DNA of 64,000 nt. Origin: Octopus bimaculoides. Its lineage: Eukaryota. Shown in pieces: positions 10,888 through 56,507 of this stretch. The translations under genes were made by a program, and so were the position numbers. The notes under the pieces were generated by a model. It was not told the origin of the DNA and ran no database searches. It was given only the letters and a program-made list of their open reading frames with translations. Where the stretch lies: contig NC_069007.1 in NCBI RefSeq assembly GCF_001194135.2, forward strand, positions 21,079,249 through 21,143,248, in the 5' to 3' direction. Position 1 is the first letter of the stretch. Every line of letters starts with the position of its first letter.

Positions 10888-12105
10888 TTATTTAGGAGTG
10901 ATTTCAGATTTCTCTCTTGCATGAATACGTTTGTGTTTAGTTAAGCTGCTCCCAACTGAGAAGGATTTCCCACAGACATTACAGCGATGTGGCTTCTCTG
11001 CTGAATGAATACGTTTATGAACAGTTAAGTGATATTTTCTAGAGAATGATTTACCACAAATATCACAATATGGTTTCTCTCCTGTGTGTAAGCGTTTGTG
11101 GATAGCAAATTCATTATTTCGAGCAAATGATTTACCACAGGTATCACACAGATAAGGTTTCTCCCCTGTATGAATACGCTTGTGAATAGCCAAGCTATCT
11201 CGGTTAGACAATGATTTACTACAAATATCACACTGATACGGCTTCTCTCCTGTATGAACGCGTTTGTGACTAACTAAACATCGATTTTCATAGAATGATT
11301 TACCACAGATATCACAGTGATGTGGTTTCTCCCCTGTGTGAAGGCGTTTGTGTCGAGTTAACCTACTTCCATCAGAGAATGATTTACTACAGATATCACA
11401 ATAAAATGGTTTCTCCCCTGTATGAATACGTTTGTGAGTAGTTAAGCTAGACGCAGCAGAGAATGATTTACCACAGACATCACAGTGATATGGTTTCTCT
11501 CCTGAGTGAATAAGTTTGTGAGTAGTTAAGTTACTTGTAGCAGAGAATGATTTACCACAGATATCACAGTGATACGGTTTTTCTCCTGTATGTGTGCGTT
11601 TGTGTTTAGTTACGGTACTCCCTGTAGAGAATGATTTACCACAGATATCACAATGATATGGTTTCTCCCCAGTATGAATGCGTACATGAGTAGTTAAATC
11701 CCTATTTTGAGTGAATGATTTACCACAAGTATCACAATGATATGGTTTCTCTCCTGTATGAATATATTTGTGTATATTCAACTTATCTCTTCGAGAGAAT
11801 GATTGCCCACAGATATCACAGTGATATGGTTTCTCTCCTGTATGAATTCGCACGTGTTTAATTAAACTGCCTCCAAGAGAGAATGATTTTCCACAGATGT
11901 CACAGTGATATGGTTTCTCACCTGTGTGAATCCGTTTGTGACTCACTAAATCTGAATTTTGATAGAAGGATTTACCACACGTATCACAGTGATGTTGTTT
12001 CTCTCCTCTATGAAAGCGTTTGTGTTGGTTGAGTTTGCCTTCGTTTGAAAATGATGCTTTGCAGATGTCATAGTCATGTAATGATTTTCCTAATTCTTCC
12101 GACAT
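10888..12105 (-). CDS. C2H2 zinc-finger protein, 405 aa, 13 intact + 1 degenerate N-terminal finger
   Basis: CxxC-x12-HxxxH repeats with TGEKPY linkers; starts MSEELGKS. Confidence 0.95.
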
Positions 12106-12368: not shown

Positions 12369-12501
12369 AGTAATTCAGCAGTGTTTCATAGAAGCCGGGT
12401 TATACGTTTGTAGAATATCTTTGCAGAGTCTTTCGAACATGATACATATTGGTGATTCTTTAAAAGTAAAAAATACTCTTTAGCCAATTTCATGTGATTT
12501 T
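12369..12501 (-). promoter_or_regulatory. Conserved leader block (putative non-coding exon 2)
   Basis: ttctttcag acceptor, uORF MFERLCKDILQTYNPASMKHC*, GTAAAA after it. Confidence 0.6.
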
Positions 12502-12999: not shown

Positions 13000-13660
13000 A
13001 GTTGTAATGATGCAGAGGAACCAACAGCAATAAATAGTTCCACTATTTCAAATAAATGTTCCATTTCTTCAGTAGGTGTTATTTCCTTTTCGTTTCAGTA
13101 CTTCAAATACACGCTCGTATTTTTATACGTTACCAAACATTTAACTAAATTACCGAATTTACATGTCAGAGATAAAGAGAAATTTTGTTTGAACATAGTA
13201 TTGATCTGACGTTAAGAATATAAGACATAACAGAAATAACCAAAACTGCAATGGAATGTCTAAAAACAAAAACAACATAATTAAAATAACAATATAATTT
13301 CGTCTTTGTTTAATGAAATTCTTTTAACTTATTGAACACATCGAAACAAATAGATGTACGTAATATGACACATATCCACTAAAAATATTTATATAAATAC
13401 AATACTTACATCGAAATATATATGCGTAAAGCCAGTCAACGAGGAAGATGTGACAATATATTGAAGTAGTGAGAATCTAAGTCTTGTGGACAAATAACAG
13501 CTTCAACAGAATTTCTAGATTTGATTCATATTTTTCAGATCAATATAAAGAAAAGAATGCTGTTTCTATTTCTTTACACAGTTAATTACCAACCATGTAT
13601 ATTTAATTGGGTTTTCACTTAACTATCAGTTATAAAGTGGAGCCGATCGAGCAGGACAGA
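13000..13660 (-). promoter_or_regulatory. Upstream cassette module (putative exon 1 + intron start) of the 10888 gene
   Basis: Reverse complement of the shared module; GTAAGTA donor at 13409. Confidence 0.6.
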
Positions 13661-13859
13661 CGTGTACGAAGCAACAACAGGAAATAAACAGAATTGGGAA
13701 GGTTTAACAATTAACTGACTAGGGGAGCTGACTCTATTTTCAACATCAGTCTGGCATTACTTAATGTTTTATACTAGTGTAGACGTGTCGTCAAAAATAG
13801 CGGAGGTTTATTTATGATAGAAAATGACATTATCAAAGCAATGAGAGAAACGATTAATA

Positions 13860-14494: not shown

Positions 14495-15180
14495 AGTTAG
14501 TTCCCTTGTCAGTTAATTGCTAAATTTTACCAATCAGGTGTGTTTATTGGCATCATCTACATCAATGTTATTTGATCATTTCCACTTTACAACTGATATT
14601 TAAAAGAAAACTCAATTAATTATACATGATTGGTAATTAAATGTGTAAAGAAATAGATGCAGCATTAATTGTGTTGACCTGAAAAATACAAATCGCTGTT
14701 TGCTATAGAAATCTAGAAATTCTCTTGAAGTTGTCACTGTCCACTGTGACTCTCTCTCTCTCTCTTGTTATGTTAATATGTAAGTATTATATTTGTATAA
14801 ACATTTCTATTATATACGTGTATTATTAAATGCATCTGATTCGATGTGTTGAGTAAGTTAAAAGAAAGAATCTCACTAAACAAAGACGAAATTATATGAA
14901 AGCAAGGCTGTTCTTTTAATACTTTCATTGTTGTCGTTTTCTTGTTTTTGATAACGTCAGATCAATACCTTGTCTACACAACATTTCTCTTTATTTCTGA
15001 CAAGTAAATTTGACAGTTTAGTTGAATGTGAGAAAATTACGATGTAATTTGTATAAGAAAATGGGGAATGTATAAAAATATGATTGTTTACTTAAAAAAC
15101 TGAAACGAAATGGAACGGCATTTATTGGAAGCAGGGAGTCTTTATTTCCGGTGGTTCTTTGCATCGTTACAACTTCCAAT
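14495..15180 (+). promoter_or_regulatory. Upstream cassette module of the 16811 gene
   Basis: Shared block; GTAAGTA donor at 14780. Confidence 0.6.
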
Positions 15181-16172: not shown

Positions 16173-16384
16173 GTAGTGCCATTAACATGGATAATATTAG
16201 TGTGTCTGTGTGACAGACTTATATGTATCCATGAGTTGTTATAGATGTTTCTACTCTATTATATAAACTTCTTGGAAATACAGATATTGGATAAGTTTAA
16301 TAGTTCAAATAGAGGTTGTGAATATACATTTTTGAATATCTACCTTTTAAACATGTGTTATATCTTATTTTTCTATTCTTTCAG

Positions 16385-16518
16385 AAAATCACATAAAATT
16401 GGCTAAAAAGTATTTTTTTACTTTTAAAGAATCACCAATATGTATCATGTTTGAAAGACTCTGCAAAGATGTTCTACAAACATATAACCAGGCTTCTATA
16501 AAACATGGCTGAATTACA
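16385..16518 (+). promoter_or_regulatory. Conserved leader block (putative exon 2)
   Basis: Acceptor AG 16383-4; uORF 16447-16512; GT at 16519. Confidence 0.6.
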
Positions 16519-16810
16519 GTAAAATATTTCGTCTGAGAGAAAAACAAGGAATTTTTTTACTTCTGTGTCTGAAATGAAGAAGAGATAATTTTCTCTTTTA
16601 AACATACTTTGATGAATTATCAAAAGTATTTGCAACATTTCTAAATATTGACAATGATCACATTTAGAAAAAAGTATAACAAAAGTGATATTTGTTTGGA
16701 ATAAACTATAAAAACAAAAATAACAATATGCATATATTTTGGTGAGAAAAGAAATATTTTTGAAAAGTTATTGAAGTGTACAACTTGAAGGATTGATTTT
16801 TCCTGAAGAG

Positions 16811-18187
16811 ATGTCAGAAGAATTAGGAAAATCATCACATGACTGTGGCATCAGCACAAAGTCATTCTCAGAAGAAGGTAAACTCAATCTACATAAACAA
16901 ATTCATAGAGGAGAAAAACAACATCATTGTTATATCTGTGGTAAATCATTCTCTTACAAAAGAAATTTAACTAGACACAATCGTATTCATACTGGAGAGA
17001 AACCATATGAGTGTGATGTCTGTAATAAATCATTCTCTCAAAGAGATAATTTAACTGCTCACAAACGCATTCATACAGGAGAGAAACCATATCAGTGTGA
17101 TATCTGCAGTAAGTCATTCTCTCGAAATCACCAATTAACTGAACACAGACGTACTCATACAGGAGAAAAACCAAATCGTTGTGACATCTGTGGTGTAACA
17201 TTTGCTGCTATGAGCACTGTAATTGCACACAAGCGTATCCATACAGGAATAAAACTATACCAATGTGATATCTGTGGTAAATCATTCTCTGCTGTGAGTA
17301 CCTTAACTACTCACAAACGCATTCATACTGGTGAGAAACCATTTCATTGTGATATCTGTGGTAAAGCATTTTCTGAAAGACATAAGGTAACCACTCACAA
17401 ACGCATTCATACAGGGGAGAAACCATTTCATTGTGATATCTGTGGTAAAGCATTCTCTCAGAAAACTGACATAACTACTCACAAACGTATTCATACAGGG
17501 GAGAAACCGTATCATTGTGACATCTGTGGTAAATCATTCTCTGTTGGCAGTAGTTTAACTCAACACAAATATATTCATACAGGTGAGAAACCACATCACT
17601 GTGATATCTGTGGTAAATCATTCTATAAAAATTCACAATTAGTCAGTCATAAACGCATTCATACAGGAGAAAAGCCATACCACTGTGATATCTGTGGTAA
17701 GTCATTCTCTCAAAATAAGAATTTAACTACCCATAAACGCACTCATACAGGTGAGAAGCCATATTACTGTGATATTTGTGGTAATTCATTCTCTCAAAGT
17801 TACCAGTTAACTCTACACAGACGTATTCACACAGGGCAAAAACCATATCACTGTGATATCTGTGGTAAGTCATTCTCTCAAAATCAACACTTAGCTATAC
17901 ACAAACGCACTCATACAGGAGAGAAACCATATCACTGTGATATCTGTGGTAAATCATTTGCTGTTAGAAGTAAGGTAACTTCTCACAAACGTGTTCATAC
18001 AGGGGAGAAACCGTATCATTGTGACATCTGTGGTAAATCATTCTCTTTTGGATGTAGTTTAACCACTCACAAACGTACCCATACAGGTGAGGAAGTACAT
18101 TATTGTGATATCTGTGGGAAATCGTTTTCTTATGGATGTAGTTTAACTAGACACAAACGTATTCATACTGGAGAGAAGCCATGTTAG
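16811..18187 (+). CDS. C2H2 zinc-finger protein, 458 aa, 15 intact + 1 degenerate finger
   Basis: ATG at 16811 (MSEELGKSS); regular 28-aa repeats. Confidence 0.95.
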
Positions 18188-18334: not shown

Positions 18335-18377
<43 letters not shown>

Positions 18378-19054
18378 TGAGGCAGTCAAAGCAATTGTGG
18401 TCTTTCTAAGGTGAGGATCTATAATAAAAATGTAATTTTTCTATACAAACCTTTTGTTGTCAAATACTCTGAATTTCTTGAATTTCTGCCAATTATAATT
18501 ACATTTACTGATGTCTAATTGTTGAATAAACAGAAGAACATTCTTTTTTTCAATTTATATTAAAGGCAGAAATTTCCTGTACATTTATGTCTTGCAGAGT
18601 TTGTACAACTGAAAGTGCTAATAGAGAATTATCCAAAATTCTGACTAGTTCGTTCTTAATATATATGATGCACCATCAATTGATACAAATTGTCAAAAGT
18701 CAGTGAAAAATCTGGAAAATCTTTTCACTCAGTCTGCTAAATATATTCATTAAGTATTGACTTTTAGTAAAATGAGTTCTAATAAATATAGTAGAGATCT
18801 ATTTATTTTTTTATTTTGGTCATATCAATTTGTTGCTACGGTGAGTCTCACCTGTAGGACCACAGTATCTTCTGGTGTGTCATGACTCATAGCTTGCCTG
18901 AGGAGCCTGTGCACTGGCAGATGAAACTCAGAGTAACAAGAGGCTGACTCAACCCAAATAATACATACCTATATATAGAGAGAGTGAGAGAGAGATTTAG
19001 ATTCAAAATTGAATATGGTACTTATGTTTAGGCACCAGAATATAGTATGGTATC

Positions 19055-19076
19055 ATATATATATATATATAAATAC

Positions 19077-19120
<44 letters not shown>

Positions 19121-19440
19121 NNNNNNNNNNNNNNNNNNNNNNNNNNNNNNNNNNNNNNNNNNNNNNNNNNNNNNNNNNNNNNNNNNNNNNNNNNNNNNNN
19201 NNNNNNNNNNNNNNNNNNNNNNNNNNNNNNNNNNNNNNNNNNNNNNNNNNNNNNNNNNNNNNNNNNNNNNNNNNNNNNNNNNNNNNNNNNNNNNNNNNNN
19301 NNNNNNNNNNNNNNNNNNNNNNNNNNNNNNNNNNNNNNNNNNNNNNNNNNNNNNNNNNNNNNNNNNNNNNNNNNNNNNNTATAAATACGTATATATATAT
19401 ATATATATATATAAATACGTATATATATATATATAAATAC

Positions 19441-19475
<35 letters not shown>

Positions 19476-21006: not shown

Positions 21007-21314
21007 TTTACAAATTGAAATGTGTATTGGCTCTGACCCATCGCCTTCGCTTACAAGTTACCAATGAGGCGCTTTTCAGGGTAAGCCATGTTATACATTA
21101 AATTGTGGCCCCTATCTTTTACATATAAGGTAATTTTTTTAGTATACACATCTCGTTTTCTAGATAAGAAATTGTCTCCATGTAAATCTTAAAATGTAAT
21201 TTTTTCTGTTTATGAGAAAACTAGAAAAATAGGGTTGATGATAATAACAATAAAAGTGAGGAAGTAGAATATTCAAGAAATCTCTTTCAAAAACTATTAA
21301 ATTTATAAAAATAC

Positions 21315-22090
21315 AGCCGCAATTAATTAAAGAATAGAGTTAGTTCCCCTTGTTGATTGTAAAATCTCTTCCTCATTTCTTGTTCTTGTTACGCACCTGC
21401 ACTGCTTGATCAGTTCCACTTTACAACTGATATTTAAGAGAAAACCCTATTAAATATATACATGATTGGTAATTAACTGCCTGAAGAAAAAGATACGGCA
21501 TGTTTCATGTTGACCTGAAAAATATAAATCAATGTTTGTTGTAAAAATCTAGAAGTTCTATTTGAAGCTGTCATTGTCCAGTCTGACTTACATTCTCAAT
21601 ACTGCAACATATTCCTCGTTGACTCTTTCTCTCCATATCTATTACTATGTAAGTATTTATTTAAACATTTCCTTTATATATGTGTCGTATTATTTACATT
21701 TATTTGTTTCGATTTGTTGGGTAATTTAATAGAAAGAATCTCACTAAACAAAGACGAGATTACATGAAAGTAAGGCTGTTCTTTTAATACTTTCATTGCG
21801 TTGTCGTTTTCTTTTAGACATTTCATTGCACTTTTGGTTATTTCCTATATTTGTTAACTTCGGATCTATATCTTGCTTAGATAATATTTCTCTTTCTTTC
21901 TGACGTGTAAATTTGACAATTTCGTTAAATGCGAGAAAATTACGATGTAATTCATAAGAAATGGGGAATGTATAAAAATACGAGTGTGCACCTGAAATAC
22001 TGAAACGAAAGCGAATATCCGTATAGAGAGGAAATGGAACGGCTTTTATGTGAAACAAGAAGTCTATATTTCTGGTTGTTCTTCTGCAAC
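21315..22090 (+). promoter_or_regulatory. Upstream cassette module of the 22837 gene
   Basis: GTAAGTA donor at 21649. Confidence 0.6.
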
Positions 22091-22416: not shown

Positions 22417-22550
22417 ATAATCACATGAAATTGGCTAAAAAGTATTTTTTTACTTTTAAAGAATCTTCAATATGTATCATACTTGAAAGACTCTGCAAAG
22501 ATATTCTACAAACGTATAACCCTGCTTCTATAAAACGTTGCTGAATTACT
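22417..22550 (+). promoter_or_regulatory. Conserved leader block
   Basis: Acceptor 22415-6; the uORF ATG is ATA in this copy; GT at 22551. Confidence 0.55.
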
Positions 22551-25007: not shown

Positions 25008-25133
25008 TAAGGTGGCGAACTGGCAGGATCGTTAGCACATCAGGCAAAATTCTTGGCTGTGGTTCTCCTGACATGACATTTGCATTTAAATTTCACCAAG
25101 GTAGACTTTGTCTTTCATCCAATGGGAGGTGGG
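25008..25133 (+). mobile_element. Decayed tRNA-derived SINE head
   Basis: aaggtggcgaactggcaggatcgttagcac..; diverged relative of the 20782 element. Confidence 0.6.
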
Positions 25134-26164
25134 NNNNNNNNNNNNNNNNNNNNNNNNNNNNNNNNNNNNNNNNNNNNNNNNNNNNNNNNNNNNNNNNNNN
25201 NNNNNNNNNNNNNNNNNNNNNNNNNNNNNNNNNNNNNNNNNNNNNNNNNNNNNNNNNNNNNNNNNNNNNNNNNNNNNNNNNNNNNNNNNNNNNNNNNNNN
25301 NNNNNNNNNNNNNNNNNNNNNNNNNNNNNNNNNNNNNNNNNNNNNNNNNNNNNNNNNNNNNNNNNNNNNNNNNNNNNNNNNNNNNNNNNNNNNNNNNNNN
25401 NNNNNNNNNNNNNNNNNNNNNNNNNNNNNNNNNNNNNNNNNNNNNNNNNNNNNNNNNNNNNNNNNNNNNNNNNNNNNNNNNNNNNNNNNNNNNNNNNNNN
25501 NNNNNNNNNNNNNNNNNNNNNNNNNNNNNNNNNNNNNNNNNNNNNNNNNNNNNNNNNNNNNNNNNNNNNNNNNNNNNNNNNNNNNNNNNNNNNNNNNNNN
25601 NNNNNNNNNNNNNNNNNNNNNNNNNNNNNNNNNNNNNNNNNNNNNNNNNNNNNNNNNNNNNNNNNNNNNNNNNNNNNNNNNNNNNNNNNNNNNNNNNNNN
25701 NNNNNNNNNNNNNNNNNNNNNNNNNNNNNNNNNNNNNNNNNNNNNNNNNNNNNNNNNNNNNNNNNNNNNNNNNNNNNNNNNNNNNNNNNNNNNNNNNNNN
25801 NNNNNNNNNNNNNNNNNNNNNNNNNNNNNNNNNNNNNNNNNNNNNNNNNNNNNNNNNNNNNNNNNNNNNNNNNNNNNNNNNNNNNNNNNNNNNNNNNNNN
25901 NNNNNNNNNNNNNNNNNNNNNNNNNNNNNNNNNNNNNNNNNNNNNNNNNNNNNNNNNNNNNNNNNNNNNNNNNNNNNNNNNNNNNNNNNNNNAATGCAAC
26001 ATTGTTTTTGTTATATATATATATATGTGTGTATATATATATATACCACACACACAATAACAAGCAACCATTAGCGAACCTCTTCCACACGTCAAACAGA
26101 ACAAGCACGCAATTGACAAGACAACACGTGCTCACGGAAACTAACGGAGAGTTGTTTTTATTTG

Positions 26165-26354
26165 TCGACTCAAAACGAATGATCACCCTTTTTTTTTTAA
26201 TGTTGACCTGAAAAATATGAATTGACAATTGTTGTAAAGAGGAAGAAAACCTCTTGAAGCTGTCATTGTCCACTCTGGCTTTCGTTCTCACTACTTCAAC
26301 ATATTCTCACATCTTCGTTCACTCTCTCTCTTCGCATATGCATTACTATGTAAG

Positions 26355-26393
<39 letters not shown>

Positions 26394-26830
26394 CATTTCT
26401 ATTGTATATGTGTTATATTATGTACATCTGTTTGTTTCAATGTGTTGAATAAGTTAAAAGAAAGAATCTCCCCAAACAAACACGAAATTATATGAAAGCA
26501 AGGCTGTTATTTTAATACTTTCATTATGTTGTTTTCTTTTAGATATTTCATCGCACGTGTGATTATTTTCTATATTTGTTAACGTCAGATCATTATCTTG
26601 TTTAGATAACATTTTTTTCTATGTTTCTGACATGTAAATTTGACGAATTAAATGCGAGAACATTCCGATGTAATTTGTAACGGAAAAATGGGGAATGTGT
26701 AAAAGTACGAGTGTGCACTTGAAATACTGAAACGAAAGGGCACCATCGTCTACAGAAGAAATGAAACGGCTTTGTATTGAAACACTACAAAGTACCTAAT
26801 TTGACCAACAATAAAAAATCCGTTTATATA
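26165..26830 (+). promoter_or_regulatory. Upstream cassette module of the 27639 gene
   Basis: GTAAGTA donor at 26350. Confidence 0.6.
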
Positions 26831-27382: not shown

Positions 27383-27515
27383 ATAATTACATGAAATCGG
27401 CCAAAAAGAATGTTTTACTTTTAAAGAATCACCAATATGTATCATGTTTGAAAGACCCTGGAGAGATATTCTACAAACGTATAACCCTGCTTCTATAAAA
27501 CGTTGCTGAATTACT
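27383..27515 (+). promoter_or_regulatory. Conserved leader block
   Basis: Acceptor 27381-2; uORF MFERPWRDILQTYNPASIKRC*; GT at 27516. Confidence 0.6.
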
Positions 27516-28744: not shown

Positions 28745-28809
28745 ATAATAGTGATTTATGAGGAAGAATTATCGAAGAAACGTTTTTCAAAAAATATCAA
28801 AAATATAAA

Positions 28810-29580
28810 ATACAGCCGTAATTCTTTAAAGACTAGAGTTAGTTCCCTTCACTCATAATTAAATCTTCCTAATTTTGGTTATTTCTTACGCATCTTTATT
28901 GCTTGATCAGTTCCACTTTACAACTGGTATTTAAGAGAAAACCCTATCAAAAATATATACACGATTGGTAATTAAATGTCTAAAGAAACAGATACAGCAT
29001 TTTTTTTTATTACGTTGACCTGAAAAATATGAATTAACGTTTCTTGTGAAAAGGAAGAAATTCTCTTGAAGTTGTCATTGTCCACTCTGAAGATGCTGAA
29101 GTAGTTCTCACTACTTCAACATATGATCACATCTTCCTCGCTGACTCTCTCTCTTTCTCTCTTCGCATATATATTACTATGTAAGTATTATATTTATAGA
29201 AACATTTCTATTGTATATATGTCATATTTCGTACATTTGCTTATTTCGATGTCAATAATCTCACTAAACAAAGACGAAATTATATGAAACTAAGGCTGTT
29301 CTTTTAATACTTTCATTGTGACCTTGTTTAGATAACATTTCTCTTTCTTTCTGACATGTAAATTTCACAATTAAGTTAATTGCAGGAAAATTACGATGTA
29401 ATTTTTGTAAAAAAAAAAAAAAAATGGGGAATGTGTAAAAGTATGCGTGTGCACTTGAAATACTGAAACGAAAAGACAATATCGTACACAGACGAAATGA
29501 ATGGGCTTTGAATTGAAACACTTGAAAGTACCTAATTTAACCAAAAATAAATATAAAAATCCGTTTATTTAATCTTTTAC
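28810..29580 (+). promoter_or_regulatory. Upstream cassette module of the 30597 gene
   Basis: GTAAGTA donor at 29181. Confidence 0.6.
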
Positions 29581-30186: not shown

Positions 30187-30319
30187 AAAATCACATAAAA
30201 TTGGCAAAAAAGTATTTTTTACTTTTAAAGAATCACCAATATGTATCATGTTTGAAAGACCCTGGAGAGATATTCTACAAACGTATAACCCTGCTTCTAT
30301 GAAACATGGCTGAATTATA
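30187..30319 (+). promoter_or_regulatory. Conserved leader block
   Basis: Acceptor 30185-6; uORF present; GT at 30320. Confidence 0.6.
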
Positions 30320-33025: not shown

Positions 33026-34099
33026 CCATTCAATCAGGATAAAAAAACTGATAAACCAATTCATTATACGATTTCCCACTAGAATTGGCTACACCCCATT
33101 TTCATGCAAACCTTTTATCAATTTTGACATATTTTGCTCNNNNNNNNNNNNNNNNNNNNNNNNNNNNNNNNNNNNNNNNNNNNNNNNNNNNNNNNNNNNN
33201 NNNNNNNNNNNNNNNNNNNNNNNNNNNNNNNNNNNNNNNNNNNNNNNNNNNNNNNNNNNNNNNNNNNNNNNNNNNNNNNNNNNNNNNNNNNNNNNNNNNN
33301 NNNNNNNNNNNNNNNNNNNNNNNNNNNNNNNNNNNNNNNNNNNNNNNNNNNNNNNNNNNNNNNNNNNNNNNNNNNNNNNNNNNNNNNNNNNNNNNNNNNN
33401 NNNNNNNNNNNNNNNNNNNNNNNNNNNNNNNNNNNNNNNNNNNNNNNNNNNNNNNNNNNNNNNNNNNNNNNNNNNNNNNNNNNNNNNNNNNNNNNNNNNN
33501 NNNNNNNNNNNNNNNNNNNNNNNNNNNNNNNNNNNNNNNNNNNNNNNNNNNNNNNNNNNNNNNNNNNNNNNNNNNNNNNNNNNNNNNNNNNNNNNNNNNN
33601 NNNNNNNNNNNNNNNNNNNNNNNNNNNNNNNNNNNNNNNNNNNNNNNNNNNNNNNNNNNNNNNNNNNNNNNNNNNNNNNNNNNNNNNNNNNNNNNNNNNN
33701 NNNNNNNNNNNNNNNNNNNNNNNNNNNNNNNNNNNNNNNNNNNNNNNNNNNNNNNNNNNNNNNNNNNNNNNNNNNNNNNNNNNNNNNNNNNNNNNTTTCA
33801 TTGTTTTTTTCTTCTTGTTTTTGCCTTTGTGAGTTACAAGTGATGCTATCTGTGGGATTCTCAGCTTTTTTAGCTGCAATTTCTGAACTTCGATATATGG
33901 TGAAGCAAATATTTGCTGATCCCTTAATTATATTTATAAATATATATGAGCTTTTAAATAAGTTCTCCACCAATAATGGTGCTTTCATACCGATGGGCTT
34001 GGTAAAAATTGTTAATTGTTAATTGATTTATTAATTAATAAATTGATAATCTTTTACCCTTTTAATTTGTACATATATATATATATATATATATAAAGT

Positions 34100-34900
34100 A
34101 CAGCCGCAATTATTTAAAGACTAGAGTTAGTTGCCCTTGTTTATAGTTGACTCTTCTTACATTTTATTTCTTGCTCTTGTCTCTTACGCATCTTAATTGC
34201 TTGATCAGTTCCACTTGGCAACTGATATTGAAGAGAAAACCCAATCAAAAATATATACACGATTGGTAATTAACTGTCTACAGAAACAGTTACAGCATTT
34301 ATTACAATATGGACTTGAAAAACATAAAGTAACGTTTATAGCCAAAAGGAAGAATTCTCTTGAAGCTGTCAGTGTCCACTCTGACTCCTTGACTCTCTCT
34401 CTCTATATATTATTATGTAAGTATTAAATAAGCATTTTTATTGTATAAGTGTCGTATTATGTACTTCTGTTTGTTTCCATGTGTTGAATAAGTTAAAAGA
34501 AAGAATCTCACGAAACAAACACGAAATTATATGAAAGTAAGGCTGTTCTTTTAATACTTTCATTGTGATATTTTCTTTTCGATATTTCATCGCACTTGTG
34601 GTTATTTACTATGTTTGTTAATGTTAGATTAATACCTTGTTTAAATAACATTTCTCTTTCTTTTTGACATGTAAATTTGACAATTTAGTTAAATGCGGAA
34701 AAATTACGATGTAATTTGTCAGAAACAATGGGGAATGTGTAAAAGTACGAGTGTGCACTTGAAATACTGAAACGAAAAGGCACTATCCGTATACAGACGA
34801 AATGAATCGGCTTTGAATCGAAACGCTAGAAAGTACCTAATTTGACCAAAATTAAATATAATAATCCGTTTATATAATCTTTTATTCGAAAATTACGAGG
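34100..34900 (+). promoter_or_regulatory. Upstream cassette module of the 35875 gene
   Basis: GTAAGTA donor at 34417. Confidence 0.6.
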
Positions 34901-35371: not shown

Positions 35372-35505
35372 ATAATCACATGAAATTGGCAAAAGAGTAT
35401 TTTTTTACTTTTAAAGAATCACCAATATGTATCATGTTCGAAAGACTCTGCAAAGATATTCTACAAACGTATAACCCTGCTTCTATAAAACGTTGCTGAA
35501 TTACT
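35372..35505 (+). promoter_or_regulatory. Conserved leader block
   Basis: Acceptor 35370-1; uORF present; GT at 35506. Confidence 0.6.

Positions 35506-37607: not shown

Positions 37608-37664
<57 letters not shown>
37608..37664. repeat. (CA)n(TA)n microsatellite
   Basis: Directly visible. Confidence 0.9.
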
Positions 37665-39059: not shown

Positions 39060-39850
39060 GATTAGTTCCCCTTGCTCATAGTTCATTCTTCCGAATTCTG
39101 TTTATTTCTTGCTCTCGTTTCTTACGCATCTTAATTGCTTGATCAGTTCCACTTTACAACTGATATTTAAGAGAAACCCAATCAGAAATATGTACATGTT
39201 TGGTAATTAACTGTCTAAAGAAACAGATACAGCATTTTTTATTACGTTGACCTGAAAAATTTGAAGTAACGTTTGTTGTGAAAAGGAAGAAATTCAGTTG
39301 AAGCTGTCATTGTCCACTCTGACTCCTTGACTCTCTCTCTATATATTATTATGTAAGTATTGTATGAACATTTCTATTCTATATGTGTCATATTATGTAC
39401 ATCTGTTTGTTTCCATGTGTTGAATAAGTTAAAAGAAAGAATCTCACGAAACAAACACGAAATTATATGAAAGCAAGGCTGTTCTTTTAATACTTTCATT
39501 GTGATATTTTCTTTTCGATATTTCATCGCACTTGTGGTTACACCTTCCGTATCGTCGTTATTTCCTATGTTTGTTAATGTTAGATTAATACCTTGTTTAA
39601 ATAACATTTCTCTTTCTTTTTGACATGTAAATTTGACAATTTAGTTAAATGCGGAAAAATTACGATGTAATTTGTCAGAAACAATGGGGAATGTGTAAAA
39701 GTACGAGTGTGCACTTGAAATACTGAAACGAAAAGGCACTATCGTATACAGACGAAATGAAACGGCGTTGAATTAAAACACTAGAAAATATCTAATTTGA
39801 TGAAAATTACATATAAATACCCGTTTATATAATGTTACTCGAAAATTACT
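39060..39850 (+). promoter_or_regulatory. Upstream cassette module of the 41775 gene
   Basis: GTAAGTA donor at 39353. Confidence 0.6.
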
Positions 39851-41341: not shown

Positions 41342-41476
41342 AAAATCATATGAAATTGGCTAAAAAATATTTTTTTTACTTTTAAAAAATCACCAATATG
41401 TATCATGTTTGAAAGACCCTGGAAAGATATTCTACAAACGTATAACCTTGCTTCTATGAAACATGCCTGAATTATA
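41342..41476 (+). promoter_or_regulatory. Conserved leader block
   Basis: Acceptor 41340-1; uORF present; GT at 41477. Confidence 0.6.
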
Positions 41477-43914: not shown

Positions 43915-44381
43915 ATACACGCACACACACACAGATGTATATATATATATTACATATATACCGCCCACATACATGACAAACATACATGCGCGCCCTCACA
44001 CACACATATAGACGAATGCACATATATATACACACACACCCATATATACGTGCACGCCTACATACACAGCCGCATACACACAGGAGTGCACACACAAAAT
44101 AACACACATACGCATGCACACACCTCTCACATACATAAAACCACATACACATATACACACACCTCTCACATACACAATACTCACTCACATACATAACACA
44201 CACGCACGCACGAAAACATACACAATATACACATACACGCATGCACAAAAAATATACACACGCGCACACGGAAACACACATACAGACACACATAAACACA
44301 CACACACACCCGTACCTAACACTCACAATCCCACACACACACGCACATCCACACACACCAACACTACACACTCACACAGAC
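43915..44381. repeat. Cryptic CA-rich microsatellite
   Basis: Degenerate (CA)n/(CATA)n run. Confidence 0.9.
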
Positions 44382-46129
44382 NNNNNNNNNNNNNNNNNNN
44401 NNNNNNNNNNNNNNNNNNNNNNNNNNNNNNNNNNNNNNNNNNNNNNNNNNNNNNNNNNNNNNNNNNNNNNNNNNNNNNNNNNNNNNNNNNNNNNNNNNNN
44501 NNNNNNNNNNNNNNNNNNNNNNNNNNNNNNNNNNNNNNNNNNNNNNNNNNNNNNNNNNNNNNNNNNNNNNNNNNNNNNNNNNNNNNNNNNNNNNNNNNNN
44601 NNNNNNNNNNNNNNNNNNNNNNNNNNNNNNNNNNNNNNNNNNNNNNNNNNNNNNNNNNNNNNNNNNNNNNNNNNNNNNNNNNNNNNNNNNNNNNNNNNNN
44701 NNNNNNNNNNNNNNNNNNNNNNNNNNNNNNNNNNNNNNNNNNNNNNNNNNNNNNNNNNNNNNNNNNNNNNNNNNNNNNNNNNNNNNNNNNNNNNNNNNNN
44801 NNNNNNNNNNNNNNNNNNNNNNNNNNNNNNNNNNNNNNNNNNNNNNNNNNNNNNNNNNNNNNNNNNNNNNNNNNNNNNNNNNNNNNNNNNNNNNNNNNNN
44901 NNNNNNNNNNNNNNNNNNNNNNNNNNNNNNNNNNNNNNNNNNNNNNNNNNNNNNNNNNNNNNNNNNNNNNNNNNNNNNNNNNNNNNNNNNNNNNNNNNNN
45001 NNNNNNNNNNNNNNNNNNNNNNNNNNNNNNNNNNNNNNNNNNNNNNNNNNNNNNNNNNNNNNNNNNNNNNNNNNNNNNNNNNNNNNNNNNNNNNNNNNNN
45101 NNNNNNNNNNNNNNNNNNNNNNNNNNNNNNNTAACACTATCCATATCACGTCCTCACTTTGTTGTTTTTTTGAACTTATATTTATATATATATATATATA
45201 TATATAATAATATTATTAGGGACAAAATATATATATATATATATAATAAAGTGTATGCCATGTTACATTAAATTTTTACTCACATGAAACCATGACTCCT
45301 ATTTTTTACTATACAATTTTTGTTTTCTAGATGAAAAATTTGAATTTCAATTTCAAAACGTAATTTTATTTGTTTATGGTTAAAATGGAAAAAAAAAAAC
45401 ATTGTTAATTAATATAATCGAAGATTTGAAATGAAATAAGTTTTGTTCCTGAAACTTATAGTGATGATGATGATGATAGTGTTGGTGGTGGTGTGTTGAT
45501 CACAAATGGATTTTCTTTTTTATAGAGACCATCACTTGTCACACTTGCACTTCGATGCAATTATTTATAGTCTTCTCACCTAAGAAATTGATATTTGTTC
45601 CTAAGGATTAATTTAGCCTAAACTATGGATTCACAAGAACCACAGTTGCAAGCTGTCTGAGAATAGGGTGCACAGATATAGAGCACGGAACAGTGAGAGG
45701 ATATAATAATAAAAAAAGACTGCACCGATGGTGTTGTGAGGAATTGGATGTAGACAGACGCCAACTATATTTAAAGAAAGCTAAAACTATGAATGCTATT
45801 AAAATGGAAATCATCCTTTCTTTCTTAAATAGGTCCTCTTAATTTTTTAAAATTATTTTAAACGAAGTTGGCAGTCTGGCAGGATCCTTAGCATATTGAG
45901 CAAAGTACTTAGCTGGGTTCTTCTGACATCACTTGTGCCTTTAAATTCTGCCAAAGTGGACTTTGTCTTTCATTCAGGGGGGTGATGCAAAGAAGCACCA
46001 GTTGAGCACTGGAGTTGACATGGAATTGCTGGCTTTGTGCCAATATTTGAAAACAATATTAATTCCAGTCTCTTATCTTCTTTCTTGCCCGGTGGAAATG
46101 CCATGACCATGTTGGCTTGTTCCTGGAGA

Positions 46130-46900
46130 TTAGTTCCCCTTGCTCATAGTTCATTCTTCCGAATTCTGTTTATTTCTTGCTCTCGTTTCTTACGCATCTT
46201 AATTGCTTGATCAGTTCCACTTTACAACTGATATTTAAGAGAAAACCCTATCAAAAATATATACACGATTGGTAATTAACTGTCTAAAGAAACAGATACA
46301 GCATTTTTTTATTACGTTGACCTGAAAAATTTGAAGTAACGTTTGTTGTGAAAAGGAAGAAATTCAGTTGAAGCTGTCATTGTCCACTCTGACTCGTTGA
46401 CTGTCTCTGTCTATATTACTATGTAAGTATTGTATGAACATTTCTATTCTATATGTGTCATATTATGTACATCTGTTTGTTTCCATGTGTTGAATAAGTT
46501 AAAAGAAAGAATCTCACGAAACAAACACGAAATTATATGGAAGTAAGGCTGTTCTTTTAATACTTTCATTGTGTTATTTGCTTGTAGATATTTCATCGCA
46601 CTTGTGGTTATTTACTATGTTTGTTAATGTTAGATTAATACATTGTTTAGATAGCATTTCTCTTTCTTTTTGACAATTTAGTTAAATACGGGAGAGTACG
46701 GTGTAATTTGTAAAGAAAAATGGGGAATGTGTAAAAGTAGGAGTGTGTACTTGAACTATGAAACGAAAAGGCATTATCATATTAGAGAGGAAATGGAACG
46801 GCTTTGAATTGAAACGCTAGAAAGTACCTAATTTGACCAAAAATAAATATAATAATCCGTTTATATAATCTTTTACTCGAAAATTACTAGGTGAAGATAT
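46130..46900 (+). promoter_or_regulatory. Upstream cassette module of the 48380 gene
   Basis: GTAAGTA donor at 46423. Confidence 0.6.
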
Positions 46901-48054: not shown

Positions 48055-48188
48055 AAAATCACATGAAATTGGCAAAAGAGTATTTTTTTACTTTTAAAGA
48101 ATCACCAATATGTATCATGTTCGAAAGACTCTGCAAAGATATTCTACAAACGTATAACCCTGCTTCTATAAAACGTTGCTGAATTACT
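48055..48188 (+). promoter_or_regulatory. Conserved leader block
   Basis: Acceptor 48053-4; uORF present; GT at 48189. Confidence 0.6.
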
Positions 48189-54852: not shown

Positions 54853-54988
54853 TGTAATTCAGCCATGTTTCATAGAAGCCTGGTTATATGTTTGTAGAAT
54901 ATCTTTGCAGAGTCTTTCAAACATGATACATATTGAAGATTCTTTAAAAGTAAAAAAAAATACTTTTTAGCCAATTTCATGTGATTTT
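54853..54988 (-). promoter_or_regulatory. Conserved leader block
   Basis: Acceptor at 54990-54989; uORF present; GT at 54852. Confidence 0.6.
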
Positions 54989-55459: not shown

Positions 55460-55930
55460 TGTGAGTTGTAATGATGCAGAAGAACCACCAGAAATAAAGA
55501 TTTCCTGTTTCAAATAAAAGCCGTTCCATTTCTTCTGTATACGATATTTACTTTTCGTTTCAGTATTTCAGGTGCACACTCGTATTTTTATATATTCCCC
55601 ATTTTCTTACACCAATTATATCGTACTTACCCCGCATTTAACTTTATAGTCAAATTTACACGTCAGAAAGAAAGAGAAATGTTATCTAAACAAGATATAG
55701 ATCTGACGTTAACGAATATAGGAAATAACTAAAAGTGCAATGAAATGTCTAAAAGAAAACGATAATGAAAGTATTAAAAGAACAACCTTACTTTCATATA
55801 ATTTCGTCTTTGTTTAGTGAGATTCTTTCTTTTAACTTATTCAACACATGGAAACAATCAGATATGTCATGACACATATATAATAGAAATGTTTATATAA
55901 ATATAATACTTACATAGTAATATATATTTA
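55460..55930 (-). promoter_or_regulatory. Truncated upstream module of the 53689 gene
   Basis: GTAAGTA donor at 55913; the exon-1 body is missing. Confidence 0.55.
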
Positions 55931-56372: not shown

Positions 56373-56507
56373 AAAATCACATGAAATTGGCTAAAAAGTA
56401 TTTTTTTTACTTTTAAAGAATCACCAATATGTATCATGTTCGAAAGACTCTGCAAAGATGTTCTACAAACGTATAACCAGGCTTCTATAAAACGTTGCTG
56501 AATTACA
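56373..56507 (+). promoter_or_regulatory. Conserved leader block
   Basis: Acceptor 56371-2; uORF present; GT at 56508. Confidence 0.6.

What the first reader, a model, noticed from the sequence alone, without database searches (positions are those of the whole stretch)
16385..16813. Conserved 134-nt leader exon candidate with a 21-codon uORF poised in frame just before the main ATG
Ten cassettes carry a 133-136 nt block that starts at a strong ttctttcAG acceptor and ends at an invariant GT(A/G)RAA. It is much better conserved than its flanks. Inside is MFERLCKDILQTYNPASIKRC*, with no indels in any copy, TGA in 10/10 and ATG in 9/10. If the GT splices to AG|ATG, the mRNA reads uORF-TGA-ATT-AC/ATN-ATG: the uORF stops two codons before, and in frame with, the ZNF start. 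This suggests a cluster-wide translational control (reinitiation/readthrough) or a fossil N-terminal domain. The longer MKLAKKYFF.. extension is not frame-conserved, because the T-run varies from 6 to 9.
Basis: partly seen in the sequence, partly recalled or inferred. Interest (0 to 1): 0.7.

Follow-up and report, generated by a model that had tools for sequence, protein, structure and literature searches.

The report
Shared non-coding leader of zinc-finger genes
The conserved 134-base block is real and is the local version of a non-coding leader found in front of well over a hundred zinc-finger genes across this genome, but the small upstream reading frame inside it is a young, neutrally evolving by-product and not a conserved control peptide.

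Summary
Ten copies of a 133-136 nt block lie in the window and an 11th lies 8.5 kb beyond it. Each starts after tttcAG and ends before GTRRAA. The block diverges 2-3 times more slowly than its flanks and has no indels except in one T-run.

The block is the local form of a genome-wide element. A 27-nt core gives 128 hits against 1 control, on at least 17 chromosomes. The element sits about 450 nt upstream of the first C2H2 finger in 88 of 98 copies.

- **Acceptor:** the AG is kept in 96 of 102 non-local copies.
- **Donor:** GT is kept in only 52 of 102, and it lacks G at both -1 and +5. So a separate exon is plausible but unproven.
- **uORF origin:** Within the local copies pN/pS is 0.92. The uORF is therefore about two substitutions old and shows no peptide constraint.
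- **Frame:** the in-frame junction depends on which of two nearby AGs is used, in 7 of 10 copies.
- **Fossil coding sequence:** it exists, but in the 3' part of the putative intron, not in the block.

No transcript data could be reached.

The parts
16385..16518 (+). Focus copy of the conserved 134-nt non-coding leader block
   Evidence: Mean pairwise p-distance is 0.089 against 0.19-0.25 in the flanks. All three frames contain stops.
16365..16384 (+). Pyrimidine tract plus CAG: 3' splice acceptor at the block's 5' edge
   Evidence: TATTCTTTCAG is invariant in 10 of 11 local copies. The AG is kept in 96 of 102 non-local paralogues. It is the best-conserved stretch of the family.
16447..16512 (+).
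   Evidence: pN/pS is 0.92. The ATG and the open codon 3 are derived states found only in the local subfamily.
16440..16454 (+).
   Evidence: Read directly. It becomes longer in copies that read TTC-GAA.
16519..16810 (+). Interval between the block and the main ATG: putative intron 2, or else unspliced 5'UTR
   Evidence: p-distance is 0.186 with 109 gap columns. Large internal deletions occur in three copies, while the first ~13 nt and the last ~45 nt are kept. The whole length is homologous to the interval of paralogues.
16758..16810 (+). Fossil of an N-terminal coding extension, now a pyrimidine tract plus AG abutting the ATG
   Evidence: The in-frame translation ...[13 protein letters not shown] aligns with ...IDFPDEM of paralogues whose ORF starts about 30 codons further upstream (MENELCEN...).
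16811..18187 (+). C2H2 zinc-finger ORF of 458 aa, with no effector domain
   Evidence: Pfam finds only C2H2 families for the paralogous ORF at 10888-12105.
14572..15116 (+). Upstream conserved module of this cassette; an invariant donor TAT|GTAAGTAT has its GT at 14780-14781. Candidate exon 1 and promoter
   Evidence: The module is present 370-1570 nt upstream of the block in 9 of 10 window cassettes and is inverted together with the gene.
12369..12501 (-). Block copy (133 nt)
22417..22550 (+). Block copy (134 nt); the uATG is ATA here
27383..27515 (+). Block copy (133 nt); the interval is shortened to 123 nt by a deletion
30187..30319 (+). Block copy (133 nt)
35372..35505 (+). Block copy (134 nt); its interval contains an assembly gap
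41342..41476 (+). Block copy (135 nt)
48055..48188 (+). Block copy (134 nt); the start of the downstream ORF is lost in an N gap
54853..54988 (-). Block copy (136 nt)
56373..56507 (+). Block copy (135 nt); it has no upstream module of its own, a 155-nt interval and a truncated ORF

Best explanation
The block is the local version of an old, family-wide, non-coding 5' leader that belongs to a large lineage-specific family of tandemly duplicated C2H2 zinc-finger genes.

Shown:
- It begins exactly at a functional-looking 3' splice acceptor. It lies at a fixed distance upstream of the finger ORF and on the same strand.
- It is constrained at the nucleotide level, not at the peptide level. The most conserved parts are the acceptor and a ~27-nt core (CATCAATATTTATCATCTTTTAAAGAC in most paralogues, CACCAATATGTATCATGTTTGAAAGAC here).
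- In the local 11-copy subfamily two point changes in that core (ATC to ATG, TAA to GAA) opened the 21-codon uORF. The uORF is young and evolves neutrally as a peptide.

Inferred:
- The leader is part of the 5'UTR. It is either a separate cassette exon spliced from its weak GT to the AG next to the ATG (about 40-50%), or the first part of one long exon that runs on into the ORF.
- It acts in cis on expression through its conserved core, as a protein or RNA binding site or as a splicing enhancer for the acceptor.
- It also acts through a shifting set of short uORFs that dampen translation without any dependence on the encoded peptide.
For: Block reality and constraint.

Non-coding status. The block has stops in all frames. 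No frame is open in more than 4 of 42 paralogues.

Genome-wide family. A search with a distant copy gives 186 first-look candidates, of which the 40 scored are 75-87% identical. Core-motif counts are 128 against 1 control and 56 against 0 control. A C2H2 finger lies in frame downstream in 88 of 98 copies, with a median distance from block start to first Cys of 454 nt and an IQR of 418-487.

Alignability among paralogues on different chromosomes. It is zero beyond -150, peaks in the block (20 of 29), falls to 8 of 29 in the interval and returns to 21 of 29 in the ORF.

Acceptor. AG is present in 96 of 102 copies. TTTCAG columns are at least 0.9 conserved where neighbouring columns are 0.7-0.8.

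uORF is derived. The joint state ATC+TAA occurs in 50 of 102 copies. ATG+GAA occurs in only 2, and there the frame runs on differently.

No coding signature. pN/pS is 0.92. There are 18 variable sites in 66 nt of uORF against 15 in 61 nt of the remaining block.

ATG density. It is 2.9 per block against 2.5 expected, so ATGs are neither selected for nor purged.

Local upstream exon candidate with an invariant GTAAGTAT.
Against: No transcript, CAGE or ribosome data could be reached, so transcription and exon status are inferred from sequence alone.

The conserved ~130 nt upstream of the acceptor is longer than a branch point plus pyrimidine tract needs, which also fits a promoter.

Sixty of the 102 paralogues were picked by matching the core motif, so the core's conservation is inflated in that sample. 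The acceptor and donor statistics are not affected by this.

Some local copies with truncated ORFs still keep the block. Part of the local similarity may therefore reflect youth or gene conversion.

The function of the core is unknown. There is no Rfam hit, no significant fold (z = -1.5) and only one compensatory pair.
Confidence: 0.6

Rival explanations
1. The block is an internal 5'UTR exon spliced GT(16519) to AG|ATG(16811). Its 21-codon uORF, ending two codons before and in frame with the main ATG, is a selected cluster-wide translational switch that works by reinitiation or readthrough.
For: GT is present in 11 of 11 local copies, and a pyrimidine tract plus AG abuts the ATG in 10 of 10.

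Internal deletions of the interval spare both ends.

Paralogues with the same short N-terminus have much stronger pyrimidine tracts before their ATG than those with the long N-terminus (0.62 against 0.32).

The uATG has A at -3 (read), so it would be used if it is present in the mRNA.
Against: The uORF is absent from 100 of 102 paralogous leaders and shows pN/pS 0.92. Its intactness is not beyond expectation (P about 0.07 or more).

The donor lacks G at -1 and +5 and is not conserved family-wide (52 of 102).

Seven of 10 copies have a second AG 2-6 nt upstream. Using it would break the frame relation.

The stop context is TGA-A, and a 6-nt spacer is unfavourable for readthrough or reinitiation (established knowledge, Kozak-type rules).

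No processed retrocopy with the predicted junction exists.
Confidence: 0.12
2. The block is exon 1 and a promoter-proximal region. Transcription starts at or near TTTCAGAA, which would be an initiator-like motif and not an acceptor. The conserved ~130 nt upstream would be the core promoter.
For: Paralogue homology begins only ~130-150 nt upstream of the block. A TATA-like CTATATC lies about 30 nt upstream in many paralogues.
Against: The pattern of constraint is that of a 3' splice site: a long pyrimidine run plus a near-invariant AG (96 of 102). The TATA-like motif is only 50-80% conserved, and it is displaced or deleted in the local copies.

Local cassettes carry an upstream module with an invariant perfect donor GTAAGTAT that needs a downstream acceptor.
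Confidence: 0.12
3. There is no function. The block's low divergence reflects recent duplication, local gene conversion or a mutational cold spot.
For: Mosaic sharing of variants among local copies and recurrent CpG changes. Likely pseudogene copies still carry an intact block.
Against: Flanks of the same copies are 2-3 times more diverged, and they are so in 44 of 45 pairs.

The same segment is the most alignable non-coding part among paralogues on at least 17 chromosomes, where the surrounding sequence is unalignable.

Indels are excluded from the block but common on both sides.
Confidence: 0.08
4. The block is a fossil or cryptic N-terminal coding exon.
For: With a T-run of seven, a 39-codon ORF (MKLAKKYFF...) spans most of the block.
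Against: The T-run varies from 6 to 9. All frames carry stops. No frame is open in more than 4 of 42 paralogues. There is no Pfam domain. The true fossil coding segment is in the interval.
Confidence: 0.02

Closest known systems
Conserved-peptide uORFs (CPuORFs; e.g. Hayden & Jorgensen 2007, PMC2075485, listed; criteria from own knowledge)
   Same: A short ORF in a leader upstream of a transcription-factor gene, kept in several homologues.
   Different: Here the peptide is unconstrained (pN/pS 0.92). The start and the open frame are confined to one 11-copy tandem subfamily. The homologous position is ATC...TAA in most paralogues.
Multi-uORF leaders of the GCN4/ATF4 type (own knowledge)
   Same: Several short uORFs, one of which overlaps or abuts the next start. 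The expected effect is to dampen main-ORF translation, independent of the peptide.
   Different: There is no evidence of a regulated switch.
Gene architecture of expanded vertebrate ZNF families (KRAB-ZNF, zebrafish FiNZ-ZNF; PMC10547256)
   Same: Tandem clusters, small upstream exon(s), and one large exon that carries the whole finger array. Paralogues share a short family-specific 5' module.
   Different: In KRAB and FiNZ genes the shared upstream module encodes a protein effector domain. Here the shared block is non-coding, and the ORFs have no recognisable effector domain. Some paralogues have a ~30-aa N-terminal motif (MENELCEN..IDFPDE), but it is encoded downstream of the block.
Conserved sequence element in front of each clustered protocadherin variable exon (own knowledge)
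   Same: A short conserved non-coding motif repeated at a fixed position 5' of every member of a large tandem family. This suggests one shared trans-acting regulator.
   Different: The protocadherin element is a promoter motif bound by CTCF. Here the motif lies downstream of a splice acceptor, is AT-rich, and has no known binder.

Membership tests
Conserved-peptide uORF | Purifying selection on the encoded peptide (dN/dS clearly below 1) | tested here: not met
Variable sites fall 4/7/7 by codon position.
Conserved-peptide uORF | Start codon, frame and stop conserved among homologous leaders beyond recent duplicates | tested here: not met
   The ATG column reads ATC in 74 and ATG in 9 of 102 copies. 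Codon 3 is a stop in 83 of 102. ATG+GAA occurs in only 2 copies, with a different downstream frame.
Conserved-peptide uORF | Ribosome occupancy or peptide-dependent stalling | not testable with these tools
   No Ribo-seq data are accessible.
Sequence-independent inhibitory uORF | The uATG lies in the mature 5'UTR upstream of the main ATG | not testable with these tools
   This needs transcripts. Look-ups returned nothing.
Sequence-independent inhibitory uORF | uATGs retained or enriched beyond expectation | tested here: inconclusive
   There are 2.9 ATG per block against 2.5 expected. Local intactness of 9 of 10 has P about 0.07 under a star tree.
Internal 5'UTR exon | Conserved 3' splice site (pyrimidine tract plus AG) at its 5' edge | tested here: met
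   11 of 11 local copies and 96 of 102 paralogues. These are the best-conserved columns of the family.
Internal 5'UTR exon | Conserved, consensus-like 5' splice site at its 3' edge | tested here: inconclusive
   GT is present in 11 of 11 local copies, but as ACW|GTRRAA with no G at -1 or +5. GT is at the aligned position in 52 of 102 paralogues (GC in 5). Conservation continues about 25 nt past it. Some subfamilies have a better donor about 22 nt downstream.
Internal 5'UTR exon | An upstream exon with a donor and a downstream acceptor to join to | tested here: met
   An invariant TAT|GTAAGTAT sits in a module 0.4-1.6 kb upstream in 9 of 10 cassettes. A pyrimidine tract plus AG abuts the ATG in 10 of 10. 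That tract descends from coding sequence.
Internal 5'UTR exon | Spliced junctions seen in RNA or in processed retrocopies | tested here: inconclusive
   No RNA data are available. Genome searches for the predicted junctions found none, apart from one chance match.
N-terminal effector-domain exon (KRAB/SCAN/FiNZ-like) | An open reading frame through the block that continues into the finger exon | tested here: not met
   There are stops in all three frames. Frames are open in only 2, 4 and 2 of 42 paralogues. An in-frame TGA lies two codons before the junction.
Structured cis-acting RNA element | A stable fold supported by covariation, or a match to a curated family | tested here: not met
   The fold z-score is -1.5, with 1 compensatory pair out of 36. 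There is no Rfam match at E<=1.

The most novel reading that the evidence does not exclude
The ~135-nt leader, and above all its ~27-nt core, is kept at a fixed position in front of well over a hundred zinc-finger paralogues on at least 17 chromosomes. It could be a common 'handle' through which one trans-acting factor controls the whole expanded ZNF repertoire together. That factor could be an RNA-binding protein, a small RNA, or one of the ZNFs acting on DNA. This would be a family-wide regulon built into the 5' leader and not into the coding repeats. The local ATG/GAA variant of the core would then be a subfamily that has changed or escaped that control.
Probability: 0.15. Interest if true: 0.65.

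Novelty: new member of a known kind. Interest (0 to 1): 0.33.

Why it matters
The uORF claim itself turns out to be ordinary. An AT-rich leader easily gains and loses short ORFs, and this one shows no sign of selection.

More useful is the finding that a very large, lineage-specific zinc-finger expansion carries a shared non-coding leader. Its splice acceptor and core motif are as well conserved as the fingers themselves.

- **Annotation:** it gives annotators a marker for the 5' ends of these genes.
- **Gene-structure evolution:** it shows how the N-terminus was remodelled in some subfamilies, where coding sequence turned into a pyrimidine tract plus AG.
- **Regulation:** it points to a testable common cis-regulatory element for a gene family whose regulation is essentially unknown.

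Tried and rejected
Transcript or annotation evidence. Exact-protein look-ups for four local ORFs found nothing on record. Homologue searches with the N-terminal regions gave only generic vertebrate ZNFs, or nothing. No cross-species or gene-model data could be used.

Covariance-model search of the genome. The model was built, but this genome cannot be searched that way. It was replaced by DNA and pattern searches.

RNA structure. The fold z-score is -1.5 and consensus-fold covariation is negligible. Rfam returned nothing. This explanation was rejected.

Coding exon. Rejected by the frame analysis.

Processed retrocopies carrying the predicted block|ATG or exon1|block junctions. None were found. 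The single 3-mismatch hit is unrelated AT-rich sequence.

Upstream module in distant paralogues. It was not detectable, apart from one partial hit, so exon 1 is inferred for the local cluster only.

Literature on cephalopod and metazoan ZNF expansions. It says nothing about a shared leader.

Organism. The guess of a coleoid cephalopod of the Octopus type rests on a 2.34-Gb genome, AT richness and a huge C2H2 expansion, recalled from memory. No tool confirmed it.

Full report
**1. What is there**

The window is AT-rich eukaryotic DNA. It maps to G000:C27:21,079,249-21,143,248 in a 2.34-Gb genome. It holds a tandem cluster of single-ORF C2H2 zinc-finger genes. Pfam finds only finger families in them.

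blastn with 16385-16530 finds ten copies of the block in the window at 87-95% identity, eight on the + strand and two on the - strand. A whole-genome search adds an 11th copy 8.5 kb beyond the window and a single 71% copy on another chromosome.

In every copy the block is 133-136 nt. It follows TATTCTTTCAG and precedes GT[AG][AG]AA. The only length variation is a run of 6-9 T. The 21-codon ORF (16447-16512) has no indel. It ends in TGA everywhere, and only c22417 lacks the ATG. The description is therefore accurate.

**2. Is the block conserved beyond chance?**

Yes. Counting substitutions only, mean pairwise divergence is:

| Region | p-distance |
|---|---|
| Block | 0.089 |
| Aligned part of the downstream interval | 0.186 |
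| 110 nt upstream | 0.25 |
| First 600 nt of the ORF | 0.233 |
| ORF, third codon positions | 0.283 |

The block is the less diverged region in 44 of 45 pairs. It has one gap column against 109 in the interval.

**3. Is the uORF conserved beyond the block?**

No.

- Eighteen of its 66 sites vary, which matches the 15 of 61 in the remaining block.
- The variable sites fall 4/7/7 on codon positions 1/2/3. About four changes are synonymous and about fourteen are not.
- I scattered each copy's observed number of substitutions at random over the block. This leaves at least 9 of 10 uORFs intact in 7% of trials, even with shared ancestry ignored. About 10% of shuffles of the block contain a closed ORF of at least 21 codons.
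- The block holds other uATGs as well. ATGAAATTGG is present in 8 of 10 window copies, and its frame depends on the T-run.

**4. The block belongs to a genome-wide family**

I searched the genome with the 71% copy (L012). This returned 186 first-look candidates, and the 40 scored are 75-87% identical and lie on many chromosomes.

The family's 27-nt core, with up to 3 mismatches, gives 128 hits against 1 for the reversed control. The local variant of the core gives 56 against 0.

I fetched 102 non-local copies. A C2H2 finger lies in frame downstream on the same strand in 88 of 98 usable copies. The distance from block start to first Cys has a median of 454 nt and an IQR of 418-487.

Among paralogues on different chromosomes nothing aligns beyond about -150. 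Alignability peaks in the block (20 of 29), drops to 8 of 29 in the interval, and returns to 21 of 29 in the ORF.

No reading frame of the block is open in more than 4 of 42 copies. ATG density (2.9) is close to the compositional expectation (2.5). The block is therefore an old non-coding element tied to these genes.

**5. What the family says about the uORF**

At codon 3 it has a stop (TAA, TGA or TAG) in 83 and GAA in 6.

The commonest joint state is ATC...TAA (50 copies). ATG with TAA, a minimal M-F-stop, marks a cluster on C28. ATG with GAA occurs in only two copies, where the frame runs on past the block end.

The 21-codon uORF therefore arose in the ancestor of the 11 local copies by two substitutions in the conserved core. 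Other uATGs come and go in the same way (66 of 102 and 48 of 102 for the two commonest).

**6. Exon or not?**

*The 5' edge.* This is convincing. TTTCAG columns are at least 0.9 conserved where neighbouring columns are 0.7-0.8, and the AG is kept in 96 of 102 copies.

In the local cluster a ~700-nt module lies 0.4-1.6 kb upstream of the block in 9 of 10 cassettes. It inverts together with the gene in the two head-to-head pairs. It contains an invariant perfect donor, TAT|GTAAGTAT. Distant paralogues do not show this module.

*The 3' edge.* This is doubtful.

- The local GT is invariant but reads ACW|GTRRAA, with no G at -1 or +5.
- At the aligned position only 52 of 102 paralogues have GT (5 have GC).
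- Conservation continues for about 25 nt past it.
- One subfamily has a much better donor (CTGG|GTAAGA) about 22 nt further on.

*The acceptor next to the ATG.* The 'acceptor' abutting the main ATG (GATTTTATTTTTCYTGRARAG|ATG, 10 of 10) is homologous to coding sequence. In 60 of 89 classified paralogues the ORF starts about 30 codons further upstream (MENELCEN...IDFPDEM...). The window copy still translates in frame as ...[10 protein letters not shown] behind a stop.

*Points in favour of a real intron.*

- Paralogues with the short N-terminus have a far more pyrimidine-rich tract before their ATG (0.62 against 0.32), with an AG at or 2 nt before it.
- Three local copies carry large internal deletions of the interval that spare its first ~13 nt and last ~45 nt.

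*Points against.* The interval is alignable along its whole length with paralogues. The block-to-finger distance is tightly kept.

I put the separate-exon model at about 40-50%.

The frame relation to the main ATG is therefore not robust. TGA-A followed by a 6-nt spacer is also a poor setting for readthrough or reinitiation (established knowledge).

**7. Other explanations tested**

- RNA structure: the fold z-score is -1.5, with one compensatory pair in 36. There is no Rfam match.
- Promoter or initiator reading of TTTCAG: this is possible, because about 130 nt upstream are conserved. But the constraint pattern is that of a splice site, and the TATA-like motif is weakly conserved.
- Gene conversion or youth: neither explains the family-wide pattern.
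- Processed retrocopies with the predicted junctions: none found.
- Transcripts, gene models and orthologues: none could be retrieved.
- Literature: the papers held do not mention such a leader.

**8. Verdict**

The block is a constrained non-coding leader that starts at a conserved splice acceptor and is shared by a very large ZNF family.

The uORF is a recent, neutrally evolving by-product. At most it adds to a general, peptide-independent dampening of translation. The fossil coding sequence lies next to the block, not in it.

What the conserved core does is unknown. A shared cis-regulatory site is the most likely reading, and the most interesting one.

Noticed in passing
L017, L022, L036, L039 and about 55 other paralogues; homologous remnant at window 16758-16810: Most paralogues encode a ~30-aa acidic N-terminal motif (MENELCEN-x-VKCKTE-x-IDFPDEMLKE) before the first finger, with no Pfam match. 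The local subfamily and about 20 others lost its ATG and start at the internal Met. The former codons now form a pyrimidine tract plus AG.
   Followed up: partly
window 13085-13688(-), 14572-15116, 21298-22046, 26191-26780, 28803-29516, 34022-34821, 39062-39773, 46130-46812, 55517-55926(-): A ~700-nt conserved module lies upstream of nearly every cassette. It carries an invariant TAT|GTAAGTAT and, about 400 nt further on, a TATAAAA-like motif. Conservation is higher after the donor than before it, which is odd for a plain exon 1 followed by an intron.
   Followed up: partly
Two neighbouring copies (L043 and L044) have independently gained ATG TTT GAA.
   Followed up: partly
window 12501/16385 and 54988/56373: Two head-to-head (divergent) gene pairs sit in an otherwise same-strand tandem array. 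The copy at 56373 lacks an upstream module of its own and has a truncated 235-aa ORF, so it is probably a partial duplicate.
   Followed up: no
window ~35.6-35.87 kb and ~48.37 kb: Runs of N (assembly gaps) fall inside the interval of the 35372 cassette and at the start of the 48314 ORF. Their lengths and N-termini are therefore unreliable.
   Followed up: no
window 18341-19473, 26354-26392, 37628-37664, 45169-45207; ORFs such as 25073-26074 and 44114-45271: Long TA-rich microsatellites and low-complexity stretches give long spurious ORFs on both strands. Eight long ORFs outside the zinc-finger genes were tested and none has a Pfam match.
   Followed up: partly
block columns ...AAACGTATAAC... 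and ...AAACGTTGC... in all local copies: Both CpG sites in the block flip between CG and CA in a pattern that does not follow the other variants. This suggests recurrent CpG decay, and therefore germline methylation, or else gene conversion.
   Followed up: no
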